In this document: positions 20,801 to 26,642 of the stretch, piece after piece
Numbering within the stretch: the stretch's first letter is position 1
Layout: each line of letters opens with the position of its first letter
Source: Schizochytrium sp. TIO01
Lineage: Eukaryota; Protista; Bigyra: Labyrinthulomycetes
Reading direction: 5' to 3'
NCBI GenBank assembly: GCA_004764695.1
Contig: SMSO01000031.1
Location: 2,828,436 to 2,892,435 of the forward strand
DNA: 64,000 bases
The notes under the pieces: generated by a model
Databases searched by the model: none
Seen by the model: the letters and a program-made list of their open reading frames with translations, nothing else
What the model was told of the DNA's origin: nothing
Translations under genes and position numbers: made by a program

Positions 20801-22063
20801 TCTCGATCACTCGGAATTGGCTCCTTGCCCTTGCGGCACCTCTTTGATCGTGATTTGGTGTGTCGATATCGCTCTTCTTCCTTCCTTTTTCCTCAAAATA
20901 TATCAATGAAAGAGGTTATCGTACACTTTACTATACTGTATTCGTACATAGTATGGGCCTATTGTATTCGTTGAGTTATTACTAATGTGCGAGTCTCTCA
21001 TATAGATAAATGACTTACTTGCCATGGAAAAGGCAAGTGTGATATGGTACATTGGTATTGAAAATACAGTTCACTGTTGTTGCTTTTTAGGCCTATAGAG
21101 TAGTCAAACAAAGTTTTGTAAGTGAAGATGTTTCTTGGGTCGAGAGCTTGGGCATTTACAACGTGTGCGCAGTGGGCTGCCATAAGGTGAACGAGGTGAA
21201 GAGACTTTTCGGGCCTAGTTGAAACAAAGAAAAGAGATTAAAACTTGACCGTAGGTGCGTTCTATTTTCGGGACAGTTCAGACGTCCAGGGCTGTTCACT
21301 CATGCTAAACCCCATCGAAGCAAAATGAAGTAATCGTAAGAACCTGTTGATCTGTCCTTCTTGTGTAGTTTTGCGGTCTTATCATGGTTTTTGCTATTCC
21401 GCTATGAAACACATGCAACGCTAAGTTTCATTGTATCAGAGAACTCCATCTAAATTCTCCAAACACACTTTGCAAACCTCACACTGCTATTGTGTGGAAG
21501 CGCAAAGTAACTTTTATGACTGTCAATGTGAGAAGATAGTGCTCTTCTAAAAACTATGGTAGGCTTAGAATACATAGCTGCTGCGATTGTAACTTCAAGT
21601 CATTTAATTCGCCACAAAGACTGCCCATCCACTTAATCACCGCACCAAAGCGGGAAAGATGACAACGGCAAAGAGCGAGCGTAGTTGGTTCGCTTTGGTG
21701 CTCCTATTGAATTGCCTGTCTAGGGGCACTAGGTATTAAATTGCATTACATTGCTTTTCATTCATTAGTACTTGTCTGTTTAGTCGTAATTACACACTAC
21801 TCTAGAAGTAATCATTTTGACATAATCCACGCGCCAAGATCTCTCTTTCTTTCCCTCAGTTTTGCTCGCCACAAATCCTTTTCCAGGCTCGCATTTACAG
21901 CCGCAGACTCGCAAGTTGACGCTTCAGCGTACAACTCATCAGACGCTCGTGAAGACTCCCCATAAGGAGTTTAAGTGCTTGTGTAAGGTTGTGTTGACTC
22001 GAGAGCAAATTGCAACCTTTAAGGGGACACAATACAGGAAAAGTGACAGCGCTTCGTTCCGCC

Positions 22064-23959
22064 ATGAGCGCGCTCCGAGTAGTTTCGCTGCTCCCGAGCG
22101 CAACGGAAGCTCTCTGCGAGATTGGAGGCGCCCACCTTCTAGTAGGAAGGTCTCACGAGTGTGACTGGCCGCCTTCGATCCAGCATGTGCCTGTGCTTAC
22201 AGCGCAGAAGACAACTTTTACGACTCCTCGCGATATCGATGAGCAAGTCCGCAACGCATTAGCCAATAACGAAAGCCTCTACACGGTGAATGCAGATCTT
22301 CTTCAGGAGCTCAAACCTGACGTAATCCTCACACAGAGCCTGTGTTCGGTATGTTCAATCGACATGAACGAGGTCGTGAAGCTTGCTCGCCAGATTACAC
22401 CGCGCCCGAAGGTTATTAGCCTGAATCCGTACACGCTTGGGGAGGTCCTTGAATCCCTCGAAGTTGTCGGCGAAGCTGTGCAACGCCCTGATGAAGCTAA
22501 GGAAGCTCGCATGAGGCTCCAAGATCGAGTGGACATTGCTCGCAAGCGTGCAGACGGTTCTACCCCAAGATTTAAGAATATTGCCTTTGTAGAATGGCCT
22601 GATCCCATTTATGTGGGAGGTCATTGGACCCCTGAGATTATCAGGATGGCAGGGGCTCGCCAAGGAGTCAATGATAATCCTGGAAGCAAGTCGTTTGCCA
22701 TCGAGACGTCTCGTCTCCAGGACGACGACCCCGATGCCATTATTGTCTGCCCTTGTGGACTGGACCTGCCTAAGACAGAAGAGCTAACCAAAGAGATGGA
22801 GGCCTCGGATTGGTGGCCCACCCTGCGTGCTGTTCAGGAGAACAACGTTGCTCTCGTCGATGGGAACCAGATGTTCAACCGCCCGGGCCCACGCCTTGTG
22901 GACTGTCTTGAGTGGCTAGTCGATTGGCTCCACCCGTTAGACCCCAAGGCACCCGGTTCAGCTAAACCCGACTTTCCCTTTAAACCTTATGTTCGCGATC
23001 CAGATGCAGGGTCTGCAGCGGCCAAAGCCAAGCTCAAGGAAGAGGAGGAGAAGCGCTTACAAGATATTGAGGACCTGCACAAGGCGGCCATGGCTATGGG
23101 AGAAAAAATGTACGCTGATCCGGCAACAGGCTATATGGTATTCACTGCTCAAGCAGCCCTGGACCGTGGCTTTTGTTGCGGTCGCGGCTGTCGCCACTGC
23201 CCGTATGGACATTGGAAGGTCCCCGCTGAACAGCGTAAGCACCACCACGCGGACCCTATTACCGATCCTCGTTTACTGCGTGCCGAGCGCGTTCCCCGCA
23301 AACTCAAAGCAGTCGCTCCAGAGCCTGACGCAACTCTTCGCATCGTTTTCTGGAGTGGTGGCAAGGACTCTTTTCTTACCTTTGTGAAGACCTGTAGAAG
23401 TGCCAAGCGTGGAGACAAAATCGTTTTGCTCAATACATTTGATCCCATTTCTAACATTGTTCCGGAGCAAGATATCGCGCTTAGTGACATTATGGAGCAA
23501 GCGAAGGCGCTTCACATGGACATGCTTATTGTTCCCTTGCCCCGCGCAAGCCCTAATCAAACCTATGTTGACACAGTAGAGCAAAGCTTGCAGATTCTTT
23601 TGCAAGAATACAACTTCCCTAAAGAGCAAGTTCACCTTGTTTTTGGAGATCTACACCTCGAGGATATTCGGGCCTGGCGTGCTAACAACTTTGCCTCTTG
23701 GCATACAGATTTCCCTCTGTTTAACATCCCCTATGAAGAACTGGAAAAAACTCTATGGGACGCCTTGGATACATACCAAGCGGATGTTATTATTTCTGCA
23801 AGCAATGTAGAGAATGTACCCGGAGTGGCGGTGGGTACGCCGTACTCCCCGGAGCTTGTAAAGCAACTCACAGAGTCTGCTGCATCATCTACTTCTGCAA
23901 CAGATCCTTTTGGCGAAAGTGGGGAGTTCCACACTCATGTTCGTTTTGCGGCCGAGTAA
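22064..23959 (+). CDS. Fusion: BtuF/TroA-type (cobalamin/Fe-siderophore) binding domain + DUF5522-like Cys motif + Dph6/MJ0570-like PP-loop ATPase
   Basis: N-terminus RVVSLLPSATE…LVGRSHECDWP…TQSLCSVC…EWPDP..GGHWTPE…DGNQMFNRPGPRL. Middle YADPATGYMVFT…RGFCCGRGCRHCPYGH. C-terminus FWSGGKDS, FGDLHLEDIRAWR, DPFGESGEFHT. First ATG at 22064. Confidence 0.88.
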   Translation: MSALRVVSLLPSATEALCEIGGAHLLVGRSHECDWPPSIQHVPVLTAQKTTFTTPRDIDEQVRNALANNESLYTVNADLLQELKPDVILTQSLCSVCSIDMNEVVKLARQITPRPKVISLNPYTLGEVLESLEVVGEAVQRPDEAKEARMRLQDRVDIARKRADGSTPRFKNIAFVEWPDPIYVGGHWTPEIIRMAGARQGVNDNPGSKSFAIETSRLQDDDPDAIIVCPCGLDLPKTEELTKEMEASDWWPTLRAVQENNVALVDGNQMFNRPGPRLVDCLEWLVDWLHPLDPKAPGSAKPDFPFKPYVRDPDAGSAAAKAKLKEEEEKRLQDIEDLHKAAMAMGEKMYADPATGYMVFTAQAALDRGFCCGRGCRHCPYGHWKVPAEQRKHHHADPITDPRLLRAERVPRKLKAVAPEPDATLRIVFWSGGKDSFLTFVKTCRSAKRGDKIVLLNTFDPISNIVPEQDIALSDIMEQAKALHMDMLIVPLPRASPNQTYVDTVEQSLQILLQEYNFPKEQVHLVFGDLHLEDIRAWRANNFASWHTDFPLFNIPYEELEKTLWDALDTYQADVIISASNVENVPGVAVGTPYSPELVKQLTESAASSTSATDPFGESGEFHTHVRFAAE

Positions 23960-26642
23960 TTGTCGCTGTGCTAGATCCTGTTGATATCACCACACAACTA
24001 CTAGTGCATAAATTGAAATTTTGGCTTCCTTAATTTGGGCCTTGCAGTCTTTCGAGAATTTCCTCTTACTTTCTATCAAAACAATTAGATGATTGACCAG
24101 TCCGCGATGCAGTGGGCTAGCTAGCTCTTCCCGATAAATACGCACTTAGGTATTATAATTGCCACATATTTAGATTAGCAAAAGAAAGAATCAGCGATGC
24201 AGTCCGATTCTCTTATAGTATCGAAATGAGTGAGTCAGGAGCTTCGCTACTTTTACTCATAGATAAACTCTTAAATTTTTTCTCCCGTCGCGTCAATAGA
24301 TTTTTACAACTTCGTCCTCGACCAAAGTTAAGACTCTTTGAAAACCAGCCAAACCTTGCTCCATGTCGCTGCCAATATCATGGAAAATGCGATATTATGA
24401 GCTTCGCGCACTGTCCTATAGCATGTAGATCTCATTTCACTCTCAGGGGTAGGTTTTGCAGAAGAATCATTCGGATTTTCAGTATTGAGCGTTCAACTTG
24501 TTACGAACCCTTTTCCCAAGGCACTATGAAAATCTGCATCGGCCTGATCTTCTTTCTTACAAATTCTCCTAAAGTCTCGTCGGAGCCACAATGTATAACA
24601 ATAGGCCCAACTAAACTTCGTGCCGAACTTTAACACTGCTACGTCTTCCACGGCTTCCACGCGCCACCTTTGTGGAGGCTTCAAGGTTGAGCGATGCAAG
24701 TGACTTTTGCTGTTGTGTCAATTATGACCATTAGGACATTTCTCCTTTTCTTTTGAAGCATAAGTAAGTAACAGGTCCACAGATAGATAGATACTGCCCA
24801 ATTACAACGGCGGTCTAAATTGGCTTGTTTTTACAATCCCAGGTCCTCGTTGTATCTACCCTGCAACTTATGACTTGCAAGGCTGTATACGGCTGAGAAA
24901 ATCGTCCATGGAGGTGTAGCAGCACTCTACCATAGGGGAGTTCTAGTTACCCTGTCAAAGGAAGTGCAAGTAAAGTGGAGATGAGATGTGGAGTTCATTG
25001 AATCAATTTCGCTACTAGGATCGCTACTAGGATACAAAAACTGTCAGTGATTCACTTTTGTTGCTTTGCATGTCATCAATTGAGCACTTCCTCGGCCTTC
25101 GAAAAACTCCAACTTACTTCATCATCTGTTGTTACCGTTTCACCAGATTAGAAAGAAAATAAAATAAAATAAAATAAAATAAAGAAAAAGAAAAGAAAGA
25201 AAAGAAAGAAAAACGGTCTTCTGAAATAGAACAAAGAAAGAACATAGAAACAGGTATTAGGCAATTGATCTCAACGTTGATGTTTCTTATCAAGACCAGG
25301 CCTGCGAATGTATACGGTTTTACTTTCATGGGTCGTCTCAGCTTCGTGAAGGCACCAAGACTCAGGCCAGTGGCGTCTTGGCCATTAGCCAGATCAGAAA
25401 GAGCAAACTAAAGCAGAAAAAAAGCTTCCTAGACCACTTTGGAACCATTCATTACCACGTGGCCCCACCCAGGTATTAACAAGGTTATCCCAGCCTCAAT
25501 ATCCGCCAGTATGCTTGGCTTTGTCCTGGAGCTTGTGCAGGCAGCTCGAGATAGCTAGCGGGCCTCGCGAACTCTGATAAACAGCTATACAATTTCACAG
25601 CTCCAATTAGCGCCTCAGAGACTTCTGGACACACCCTACAAATGCTTCGTAGTAGGTAGCTCTTCATGATGGCCACAGGTATCGCAACACAGATAAAACA
25701 GGATAGAAACTCGCTAGATTTACTTCGCACAGCATCATCTTTTACAATACTGGTGACAGTGTCGTTGCAGATTAAACCTCAAGTCTTTCAAAAGACACGT
25801 CGGGTCTGAGCCAATCCCTCAACGCGAGGGACACAGTGTTGGCGCCTTTGACTTTGCGCCGAATCCGATGCCACGCGGCAAAATTAACTAAGACATGGTG
25901 CTCAATAAGAGGTATTAGCAGGTGGAATGAAGTAAGACCTTGCTGCCAGAAAACGCGAAGTCTCCCGAGCATGAAGGCTTGCGAAGCTTGTGGTCCGCGA
26001 TACTAGCGGACGCAAATTAGTTTTTAAGATGATTGGAACACAACAAAGTCCTCTTTAGTCAATCTTCAGAGGAATTCCGCTCTTCACGTTTGCACCCAAG
26101 GACGCAACAGTCAGACCATAAGCACTAAAGCCTGTTTCGACTTTGGTGATAATACATAGAAACTGGTCATTATGCAAATATACAGGTAACTATTTATCGT
26201 AAGGTACAAGACTGAAACGGAGTCGAAAAGAGCCCATAAAGCAAGGAACAAGAAACCAATTGACTCCCGTTACGAGCCAGATAACGTTATTTGTAAGAGT
26301 GGTTTGGGGCAGGAAGTCCAACACAAATTCTTTTATATGTAAAGTTAATCTTTAAAAAAAAATGATCGAATTAGTGAGAAACTCGAAACATAGAATATAA
26401 CAATGAGAATCGTCAATCAAATCAGGTTGGTCATTGAGCGGACGAACTAGAGGGTCCCCATTCAGGAGGCGACCTGTAGGCCCACGTGTCAGGAGTTACG
26501 GGCTATTTATGCCTATCAGTCGCCTGAGGTTGCTCGCGTTGGTCTACTGCATCCAACACGCCACCGACCTGAGTGCATTGGGCGCGCTGAGTTCGGGCCC
26601 TCTTACAATTGTTATCGCTGGTTGATCTTGTTGATACTGTTC

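What the first reader, a model, noticed from the sequence alone, without database searches (positions are those of the whole stretch)
22064..23959. Cytosolic BtuF-like + Cys-cluster + Dph6-like amide-ligase fusion: candidate eukaryotic vitamin B12 binding/repair module
Seen: one uninterrupted, intronless ORF joins (i) a BtuF/TroA-class substrate-binding domain with no signal peptide or lipobox, (ii) a DPxTGYxVFT…RGxCCGxGCRHCPYGH module (~23063-23212) and (iii) a PP-loop ATPase (SGGKDS at 23354). Established: domain (i) belongs to the cobalamin/siderophore-binding superfamily; (ii) resembles DUF5522/C1orf53; (iii) belongs to the Dph6/MJ0570 family, which adenylates a carboxylate and amidates it with ammonia. 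Its motifs (FGDLHLEDIR, DPFGESGEFHT) look like the bacterial branch (FGDIFLEDLR, DPCGENGEFHT) rather than eukaryotic Dph6 (GEGGEYET), and bacteria have no diphthamide. Inference: this is a Rosetta-stone fusion pointing to one pathway, e.g. capturing a corrinoid and re-amidating hydrolysed side chains, with the Cys cluster binding metal or Fe-S. It could also give a function to two orphan families.
Basis: partly seen in the sequence, partly recalled or inferred. Interest (0 to 1): 0.85.

Follow-up and report, generated by a model that had tools for sequence, protein, structure and literature searches.

The report
Cytosolic B12-handling three-domain fusion protein
A vitamin-B12-dependent marine protist encodes one protein joining a BtuF-like binding domain without an export signal, a small cysteine-cluster domain and an ATP-using enzyme domain; in bacteria the same parts sit next to each other, in about a third of scanned loci behind B12 riboswitches, so it is very probably an uncharacterised intracellular B12-processing module.

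Summary
Window 22064-23959 (+) is one uninterrupted 631-aa ORF. It joins a signal-less Peripla_BP_2 domain, DUF5522 and a divergent DUF71/COG2102 PP-loop domain. Transcriptome-sized assemblies cover it as one unspliced unit.

The ATPase is not Dph6:
- It carries ESGEFH, the "DUF71-B12" signature published in 2012.
- The genome has a separate canonical DPH6 (EGGEYE) and a standalone DUF71-B12 paralogue.

The B12 link is strong but indirect:
- In bacteria the same parts are fused or are adjacent genes in the same order.
- 13 of 38 scanned loci carry a cobalamin riboswitch (about 0.26 expected), with BtuB-type receptors, BtuCD-type parts and an adenosyltransferase nearby.
- All 30 host genomes tested have MetH and none has CbiC. 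Only 3 have true CbiB.

The host protist has MetH, MCM, CobT and CobS, but no MetE, CbiB, CobU or CbiZ was found.

Corrinoid binding and side-chain re-amidation remain untested. Some algal homologues lack the PP-loop, so the amide ligase may not be the core function.

Verdict: a new variant of a known, still uncharacterised kind (DUF71-B12). The links to a tri-Cys cytosolic binding protein and to DUF5522 were absent from the searched literature.

The parts
21888..24351 (+). Transcript-like unit: putative 5' UTR of about 165-175 nt, the CDS, and a 3' UTR of about 325-390 nt, with no intron
   Evidence: Whole contigs of transcriptome-sized assemblies X6 (21888-24351) and X5 (21901-24283) show no joints. 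A genome-sized run, X16, reads straight through the stretch. The library type of X5 and X6 is a guess by the tool.
22064..23959 (+). CDS, 631 aa plus stop codon
   Evidence: a 100% identical protein, P0001, is in the public collection
22064..22963 (+). Signal-less class III binding-protein domain (BtuF/haem-binding-protein fold), aa 1-300
   Evidence: Pfam PF01497, E 8e-16. Foldseek best match is V. cholerae BtuF 5ysc (E 1.5e-13), followed by haem-binding proteins; E. coli BtuF gives TM 0.80-0.86.
22154..22156 (+). His31, invariant in the family (SHEC motif)
22343..22354 (+). Cys94-x2-Cys97, invariant; absent from the periplasmic BtuF-type paralogues of the same bacterial operons
22754..22756 (+). 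Cys231, third near-invariant cysteine of the binding domain (invariant in the 42-protein alignment A2; Tyr in one bacterial partner, L077)
23075..23212 (+). DUF5522 domain, aa 338-383
   Evidence: Pfam PF17653, 74 bits against a cut-off of 25
23174..23212 (+). Cys/His cluster CCGRGCRHCPYGH (C371, C372, C376, C379, H378, H383); it contains a CX3CX2C spacing
   Evidence: Invariant in 42 full-length homologues; sequence read directly
23321..23956 (+). DUF71/COG2102 PP-loop ATP pyrophosphatase domain of the H-motif (DUF71-B12-like) type
23354..23371 (+). PP-loop SGGKDS
23915..23935 (+). ESGEFHT: His in place of the catalytic Glu188 of Dph6
   Evidence: signature defined in PMC3541065

Best explanation
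This is a cytosolic corrinoid-handling protein of a B12-auxotrophic protist. It is the fused form of a two-gene module that B12-scavenging bacteria express together with their B12 uptake genes.

Shown: the gene is one ORF and one transcript-like unit. The N-terminal domain has the BtuF/haem-binding-protein fold and lacks any export signal. The C-terminal domain is an intact PP-loop ATP pyrophosphatase of the DUF71 family with the DUF71-B12 His signature. The bacterial counterparts are enriched about 50-fold behind cobalamin riboswitches.

Inferred: the binding domain holds an imported cobamide in the cytosol. The PP-loop domain adenylates a carboxylate on that corrinoid and transfers it to ammonia or an amine. 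The most economical candidate is re-amidation of a deamidated side chain, because most hosts have no other corrinoid-assembly enzyme. The DUF5522 Cys/His cluster binds a metal or an Fe-S cluster, or ligates cobalt, between the two domains.

My confidence is about 0.75 for the general reading (intracellular B12 processing module). It is about 0.25-0.3 for re-amidation specifically.
For: One ORF and one unspliced unit.

Domains by Pfam, profile and fold.

The same three-domain protein occurs across oomycetes, chytrids, diplonemids, cryptophytes, chrysophytes and labyrinthulomycetes.

Of 80 bacterial loci, 3 are fusions and 21 have binding-protein and DUF5522-DUF71 genes adjacent in the same order.

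A cobalamin riboswitch lies in 13 of 38 scanned loci, 12 of them upstream on the same strand. The background is 49 riboswitches in about 135 Mb of 30 host genomes, which gives about 0.26 expected. In G002 and G005 the genome's only riboswitch is the one at this operon.

Operon partners are a TonB-dependent receptor, a signal-bearing binding protein, a FecCD permease, an ABC ATPase, a PduO-type adenosyltransferase and CobQ.

Host genomes: MetH 30/30, CbiC 0/30, true CbiB 3/30, CobS 8/30.

The protist has MetH and MCM and no detectable MetE.

The PP-loop and the ExGExH motif are conserved in 42 homologues.
Against: No binding or enzyme data exist.

The fold does not separate B12 from haem binders.

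25 of 38 scanned bacterial loci have no riboswitch. These include all three true bacterial fusions scanned or fetched and the Nitrospinota-like clade.

Green-algal, haptophyte and streptophyte-algal homologues keep the binding domain and DUF5522 but lack SGGKD and ExGExHT, and about 410-aa proteins of binding domain plus DUF5522 are common. The ATP-dependent step is therefore dispensable in some lineages.

DUF5522 also occurs alone in actinobacteria and phages, so it is not B12-specific.

The window's gene neighbours are unrelated to B12.
Confidence: 0.55

Rival explanations
1. B12 chaperone or reductive-processing module, a functional counterpart of animal CblC/CblD. The tri-Cys binding domain and the DUF5522 cluster hold cobalamin through Co-S or Co-His ligation, or carry an Fe-S cluster that removes or exchanges the upper ligand. 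The PP-loop domain is an accessory that some lineages have lost.
For: The binding domain plus DUF5522 persists without an active PP-loop domain. Three Cys plus one His, invariant or nearly so, sit at strand ends of the binding domain and are absent from the periplasmic BtuF paralogues. The cluster has CX3CX2C spacing. No MMACHC was detected in the genome (no positive control). Cys-ligated, base-off B12 and decyanation are documented for BtuM (PMC6072759). A PduO-type adenosyltransferase lies in the same operon in Limnohabitans.
Against: In most members the PP-loop and the H-motif are strictly conserved, which points to real adenylation chemistry. The absence of MMACHC is not secured. Metal or cobalt ligation by these cysteines is purely inferred.
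Confidence: 0.2
2. A cobamide remodelling step, as proposed for DUF71-B12 in 2012. The enzyme opens or re-activates pseudocobalamin or cobinamide so that CobT and CobS can attach dimethylbenzimidazole. It would replace CbiZ, CbiB or CobU.
For: The protist has an intact head-to-head CobT-CobS pair, but no CobU, CbiB or CbiZ was found, so upstream remodelling steps are missing. DUF71-B12 anticorrelates with bacterial CbiZ (PMC3541065). The algal remodelling pathway is acknowledged as incomplete (bioRxiv 10.64898/2026.08.07.738727).
Against: 22 of 30 bacterial host genomes have no CobS, 27 of 30 have no true CbiB and none has CbiC. In most hosts there is nothing downstream to use a remodelling intermediate.
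Confidence: 0.15
3. It is not a B12 protein. The binding domain holds haem, another tetrapyrrole or a metal ion, and the riboswitch association reflects only some bacterial lineages.
For: Haem-binding proteins score as well as BtuF in the fold search. 25 of 38 loci lack a riboswitch. A Cys/His-lined cleft could bind a metal.
Against: Riboswitches are enriched about 50-fold and sit in the operon leader. MetH is present in 30 of 30 hosts. The domain carries the DUF71-B12 signature.
Confidence: 0.07
4. A second diphthine-ammonia ligase, as some database names of homologues say.
For: UniRef and JGI names of homologues; weak PF01902 match.
Against: Glu188 is replaced by His. The genome has a canonical 714-aa DPH6 with EGGEYE. 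The tree separates this clade from Dph6 by a long, fully supported branch. The bacterial orthologues live in organisms without diphthamide.
Confidence: 0.01

Closest known systems
DUF71-B12 subgroup of DUF71/COG2102 (de Crecy-Lagard et al. 2012, Biol Direct 7:32, PMC3541065)
   Same: PP-loop ATP pyrophosphatase fold. His replaces Glu188 (ENGEF/YH there, ESGEFH here). In prokaryotes the genes cluster with B12 transport genes. The function is still unknown (listed as such in PMC5041015).
   Different: The DUF5522-linked domains form their own clade on a stem of 2.9 substitutions per site, and they fall below Pfam's cut-off. They are always preceded by DUF5522 and usually partnered or fused with a signal-less tri-Cys binding protein. 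Their hosts mostly lack CbiB (3/30), whereas the 2012 set co-occurred with CbiB. The paper mentions no eukaryotic member, no BtuF-type fusion and no DUF5522.
BtuF, periplasmic vitamin B12-binding protein (PDB 5ysc, 1n2z, 1n4a)
   Same: Two-lobed class III binding-protein fold with a long backbone helix; best structural match.
   Different: No signal peptide. It is cytosolic and is fused to enzyme-like domains. It has invariant or near-invariant His31, Cys94, Cys97 and Cys231, which are absent from BtuF-type paralogues in the same operons. Identity is about 17-20%.
Dph6 / PF0828 / MJ0570 diphthine-ammonia ligase
   Same: Same domain family and fold; intact SGGKD PP-loop.
   Different: The EGGE/DxE motif is not kept and there are no RidA-type C-terminal domains. 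The genome's true DPH6 lies elsewhere (L001).
CBA1, algal cobalamin acquisition protein (PMC10828217)
   Same: A eukaryotic protein with a predicted BtuF-like fold, tied to B12 use.
   Different: CBA1 has a signal peptide and sits in the ER and plasma membrane, where it acts in uptake. This protein has no targeting sequence and carries two further domains.
PP-loop enzymes with a Cys-bound Fe-S or Zn site (TtuA, NcsA, LarE, QueC)
   Same: A PP-loop domain combined with a small Cys cluster. These appear as weaker fold matches.
   Different: The matches are through the PP-loop core only. The cluster here lies N-terminal, in a separate DUF5522 module. No evidence for sulfur transfer.

Membership tests
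DUF71/COG2102 (Pfam PF01902) superfamily | PP-loop SGGKD ATP-binding motif | tested here: met
   SGGKDS at aa 431-436; invariant in 42 homologues
DUF71/COG2102 (Pfam PF01902) superfamily | Score above Pfam's gathering threshold | tested here: not met
   13.1 bits against 23.2 for the single sequence. Some homologues pass in precomputed hits.
DUF71/COG2102 (Pfam PF01902) superfamily | Full-length similarity and fold of PF0828/PH1257, including the C-terminal subdomain | tested here: met
   Family profile against 3rjz gives E 3.8e-14 over residues 9-200. Foldseek top hits are 2d13 and 3rjz/3rk0/3rk1, TM 0.60-0.69.
Dph6 (diphthine-ammonia ligase) | EGGE/DxE188 motif with the catalytic Glu | tested here: not met
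   The motif here is ESGEFHT. The genome's L001 protein has EGGEYE.
Dph6 (diphthine-ammonia ligase) | Groups with archaeal and eukaryotic Dph6 in a tree | tested here: not met
   It lies in a separate clade with support 100; L001 groups with the canonical sequences.
DUF71-B12 subgroup | ENGEF/YH188 signature | tested here: met
   ESGEFH, with Asn replaced by Ser. Bacterial relatives have ENGEFH, ENGEGH or ENGEAH.
DUF71-B12 subgroup | Prokaryotic members cluster with B12 transport or salvage genes | tested here: met
   Riboswitch in 13 of 38 loci, against about 0.26 expected. BtuB-type receptor, FecCD permease, ABC ATPase, adenosyltransferase and CobQ lie in the operons.
DUF71-B12 subgroup | Co-occurrence with CbiB (2012 definition) | tested here: not met
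   True CbiB is found in 3 of 30 host genomes and is absent from the protist.
DUF71-B12 subgroup | Falls inside the classical ENGEYH clade | tested here: inconclusive
   It is sister to, or nested among, classical sequences, but on a very long stem of 2.94. The root is weakly supported (78).
BtuF (periplasmic B12-binding protein) | Class III binding-protein fold | tested here: met
BtuF (periplasmic B12-binding protein) | Signal peptide and periplasmic location, serving BtuCD | tested here: not met
   Only four residues precede strand 1. Bacterial partners likewise have 1-8 residues there.
BtuF (periplasmic B12-binding protein) | Binds cobalamin | not testable with these tools
   Needs binding assays or a co-fold with the ligand.
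DUF5522 (PF17653) | Pfam match above threshold with the CCGxxCRHCPYGH motif | tested here: met
   74.1 bits against a cut-off of 25; motif invariant

The most novel reading that the evidence does not exclude
B12-scavenging bacteria and most B12-dependent protist lineages share a previously undescribed intracellular B12-processing system. It consists of a cytosolic tri-Cys BtuF-like protein, a DUF5522 metal or Fe-S module, and a PP-loop adenylating enzyme. The system performs a new reaction on complete cobamides, either repair by re-amidation or Cys/Fe-S-mediated ligand processing. This would fill the place that CblC/CblD hold in animals and would give a first function to DUF5522 and to the 14-year-old orphan DUF71-B12.
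Probability: 0.35. Interest if true: 0.8.

Novelty: new variant of a known kind. Interest (0 to 1): 0.62.

Why it matters
Vitamin B12 limits growth of many protists and aquatic bacteria. In algae and other protists only one uptake protein (CBA1) is known, and nothing is known about what happens to B12 inside the cell.

This gene is a concrete, testable candidate. It is conserved from bacteria to many protist lineages. It is present in oomycete plant pathogens and in industrial thraustochytrids. It physically joins a probable corrinoid-binding domain to an enzyme family predicted in 2012 to act in B12 salvage but never characterised.

The fusion says which proteins to purify together and which substrate class to try. 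It also flags database names of homologues ("diphthine--ammonia ligase", "iron complex transport substrate-binding protein") as probably wrong.

Tried and rejected
Bacterial context therefore came from the search for related loci plus my own ORF calling and clustering.
There is no verdict on physical contact.
- A search with the 86-aa DUF5522 piece found only one protein, a limit of the word index. The claimed kinship with human C1orf53 was therefore not tested.
- The ESM Atlas gave only sub-0.9 leads: standalone DUF5522 in actinobacteria and phages.
- My first greedy ORF filter lost genes in high-GC loci, so I replaced it with unfiltered ORFs.
- DUF6580 showed no sequence match to any solved structure, BtuM included.
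- The MMACHC search found nothing, but it had no positive control, so that absence is not secured.
- The second-DPH6 reading was considered and rejected.
- No B12-related neighbours were found in the window itself.
- I could not compare with CBA1 because no reference sequence was available without typing one from memory.
Full report
**Observation.** Window 22010-23959 (+) is one open frame. The first ATG is at 22064, giving 631 aa. There is no ATG anywhere in 21888-22063. Pfam finds Peripla_BP_2 at aa 6-266 (E 8e-16) and DUF5522 at aa 338-383 (E 9e-21). Only four residues precede the first beta-strand (MSALRVVSLLPSATE), so there is no signal peptide, lipobox or transit peptide.

**One transcript?** No run is on record as RNA. 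Two transcriptome-sized assemblies from different studies give complete contigs that begin and end just outside the ORF: X6 covers 21888-24351 and X5 covers 21901-24283. Neither shows a joint. A genome-sized assembly, X16, reads through the whole stretch. This fits one unspliced mRNA carrying all three domains, but the library type is only the tool's guess. Relatives have complete MMETSP and EukProt transcripts with the same architecture.

**The three domains.**
- The AlphaFold2 model of the whole protein is confident (pLDDT 92.5, pTM 0.62).
- The N-terminal domain's best solved match is V. cholerae BtuF (5ysc, E 1.5e-13). Periplasmic haem-binding proteins and E. coli BtuF (TM 0.80-0.86) follow. 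It is therefore a tetrapyrrole-type class III binding protein, and fold alone cannot choose between B12 and haem.
- The C-terminal domain scores below Pfam's cut-off as a single sequence (13.1 against 23.2 bits). A profile of the family matches P. furiosus PF0828 (3rjz) at E 3.8e-14 over its whole length. A separate model of aa 310-631 (pLDDT 84.9) is closest to PH1257 and PF0828.
- In that alignment the family's gEnGEfHT lies over the GEGGEFET of Dph6, so His replaces the catalytic Glu188.

**The host genome.**
- The nearest relative of the protein is from the labyrinthulomycete Mucochytrium quahogii (54% identity).
- The 64-Mb genome has a canonical 714-aa DPH6 with EGGEYE (L001).
- It also has a standalone 304-aa paralogue with ENGEYH (L002).
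- This gene is the genome's only Peripla_BP_2 match.
- The genome has MetH and MCM and no detectable MetE, so the organism should depend on B12.
- It carries an intact head-to-head CobT-CobS pair, but no CbiB, CobU or CbiZ was found.
- MMACHC was not found, but that search had no positive control.
- The window's own neighbours (RNase T2, ribose-5-phosphate isomerase, a cyclase) are unrelated.

**Distribution and architecture.**
- Full-length three-domain homologues (33-54% identity) occur in oomycetes, chytrids, diplonemids, cryptophytes, chrysophytes and labyrinthulomycetes.
- The best matches of the isolated C-terminal domain are about 276-283-aa bacterial proteins made of DUF5522 plus the DUF71 domain, for example in Polynucleobacter.
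- A scan of bacterial genomes confirmed 311 related stretches, and 80 loci were fetched.
- In those 80 loci, 3 are true three-domain fusions (Myxococcota and Proteobacteria). In 21, a signal-less binding-protein gene is followed directly by the DUF5522-DUF71 gene, in the same order as in the fusion. In 3 the two genes are in the same locus but apart. In 50, only DUF5522-DUF71 lies in the fetched DNA.
- One metagenomic protein, P0008, has the permuted order DUF5522-DUF71-binding domain-DUF5522.
- On the tree, the bacterial fusions sit apart from the eukaryotic ones.
- The association has therefore arisen or been fixed more than once, which is what a Rosetta-stone argument needs.

**The B12 link.**
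- Rfam finds a cobalamin riboswitch in 13 of 38 scanned loci (0.725 Mb). In 12 of them it lies upstream on the same strand.
- Thirty host genomes together hold 49 such riboswitches in about 135 Mb, so about 0.26 were expected by chance.
- In G002 (a Polynucleobacter MAG) and G005 (Limnohabitans planktonicus), the only riboswitch of the genome is the one at this operon.
- Typical alpha- and gamma-proteobacterial operon: riboswitch, then DUF6580, then the signal-less binding protein, then DUF5522-DUF71.
- Typical beta-proteobacterial operon: riboswitch, then a TonB-dependent receptor, then (in some) a signal-bearing binding protein, FecCD permease, ABC ATPase and PduO-type adenosyltransferase, then DUF5522-DUF71, then binding proteins and CobQ.
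- The link is not universal. The Nitrospinota-like clade, Gemmatimonadota, the Myxococcota loci scanned and standalone second copies in Erythrobacter have no riboswitch nearby.

**What kind of organisms carry it.** All 30 bacterial genomes tested have MetH. None has CbiC, so none makes corrin de novo. Only 3 have a true CbiB, 8 have CobS and 4 have CobQ. Most hosts therefore use B12 but have no enzyme that could take up a remodelling intermediate. This favours an action on complete cobamides. It also differs from the 2012 DUF71-B12 set, which co-occurred with CbiB.

**A distinct binding-protein subfamily.** In 42 full-length proteins His31, Glu32, Cys94, Cys97, Trp178, Trp188, Cys231, Asp266 and Gly267 are invariant. 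In the model these lie at the C-terminal ends of strands, where class III binding proteins line their cleft (the placement in the cleft is my inference). His31, Cys94, Cys97, Trp178, Trp188 and Cys231 are also present in almost every signal-less bacterial partner (Cys231 is Tyr in one, L077; Glu32 is Ser in the alpha- and gamma-proteobacterial partners). They are absent from the signal-bearing BtuF-type paralogues encoded in the same operons. DUF5522 contributes four invariant Cys, the invariant His378 and the near-invariant His383, with CX3CX2C spacing.

**Tree.** All DUF5522-linked DUF71 domains, eukaryotic and bacterial, form one clade (SH-aLRT 100) on a stem of 2.94 substitutions per site. 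The genome's L002 paralogue sits among classical ENGEYH sequences, and L001 sits with canonical Dph6 (quick search, 78 rows). The direction of transfer between bacteria and eukaryotes is not resolved.

**Mechanism.** The intact PP-loop argues for adenylation chemistry. In this family the known acceptor is a carboxylate that is then amidated (Dph6; established knowledge, PMC3541065). Hosts that lack all corrinoid-assembly enzymes leave deamidated side chains of complete cobamides as the simplest carboxylate substrate.

Evidence against repair being the core function: green-algal, haptophyte and streptophyte-algal homologues keep the binding domain and DUF5522 but have a degenerate third domain without SGGKD or ExGExHT. 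Many proteins are binding domain plus DUF5522 only. A chaperone or reductive-processing role built on the cysteines is a serious rival, comparable to Cys-ligated B12 in BtuM (PMC6072759). A remodelling role is attractive for this protist because of CobT/CobS without CobU, CbiB or CbiZ. It fits the bacterial hosts poorly.

**Literature.**
- De Crecy-Lagard et al. 2012 defined DUF71-B12, its ENGEF/YH signature and its clustering with btuCDF and cbiB, and proposed a role in pseudo-B12 salvage. The paper contains no mention of eukaryotic members, periplasmic-type binding proteins or such fusions.
- In 2016 the function was still listed as unknown.
- No paper in the library contains "DUF5522" or "DUF6580".
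- Algal B12 papers up to August 2026 name CBA1 as the only known uptake protein and do not mention this gene.
- The library lacks most subscription journals, so absence from it is not proof of novelty.

**Limits.** Many host genomes are MAGs, so absences are soft, although several are complete chromosomes. My ORF calls are mechanical.

Noticed in passing
G000 contig C30: L088:6972-8042 (-) and L089:44-1123 (+), about 2 Mb from the window: Intact CobT (DBI_PRT, 346 bits) and CobS (145 bits) genes lie head to head about 2 kb apart in this protist. No CobU, CbiB or CbiZ was found in the genome. This is a lower-ligand attachment pair without the known upstream steps.
   Followed up: partly
L002:1369-2283 (-), G000 contig C36: A standalone 304-aa DUF71 paralogue with SFTGGKD and CGENGEYHT. 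It groups with classical DUF71-B12 sequences. The genome therefore has three DUF71 members: DPH6, this paralogue and the fusion.
   Followed up: partly
L054:9505-10032, L071:9508-10038, L027:9511-10041, L018:9479-10000, L066:6645-7172: A 173-176-aa hydrophobic DUF6580 protein is the first gene behind the cobalamin riboswitch in 11 loci. It has no sequence match to any solved structure (BtuM included) and no literature. It is a candidate inner-membrane B12 transporter.
   Followed up: partly
L044:14788-16314, L057:14306-15772, L066:8940-10391: A CobQ-type amidotransferase sits in riboswitch-controlled B12 uptake operons. In Limnohabitans planktonicus (G005) it occurs without CbiC, without CobS and without a strong CbiB. 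It may act on salvaged corrinoid side chains.
   Followed up: partly
P0070, P0071, P0078, P0080, P0110, P0117 (haptophyte, green-algal and streptophyte-algal homologues): The third domain is degenerate, with no SGGKD and no ExGExHT, while the binding domain and DUF5522 stay intact. It is a probable pseudoenzyme domain.
   Followed up: partly
P0008 (741 aa, metagenome): Permuted architecture: DUF5522, DUF71, binding domain, then a second DUF5522. It may be an independent fusion or a merged gene call.
   Followed up: no
L044:10864-11664, L057:10825-11631, L033:10849-11652: A second kind of signal-less Peripla_BP_2 protein (about 267 aa, beginning ...QRIVCLTEE...). It follows DUF5522-DUF71 in beta-proteobacteria and is not similar to the tri-Cys type.
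   Followed up: no
L084 (G000 contig C31:7535909-7536733): The MetH activation domain lies in a 2867-aa open frame.
   Followed up: no
G016-G021 (for example G016:C1:4418834-4419546): The Nitrospinota-like genomes have two cobalamin riboswitches in tandem about 0.5 kb apart, far from the module.
   Followed up: no
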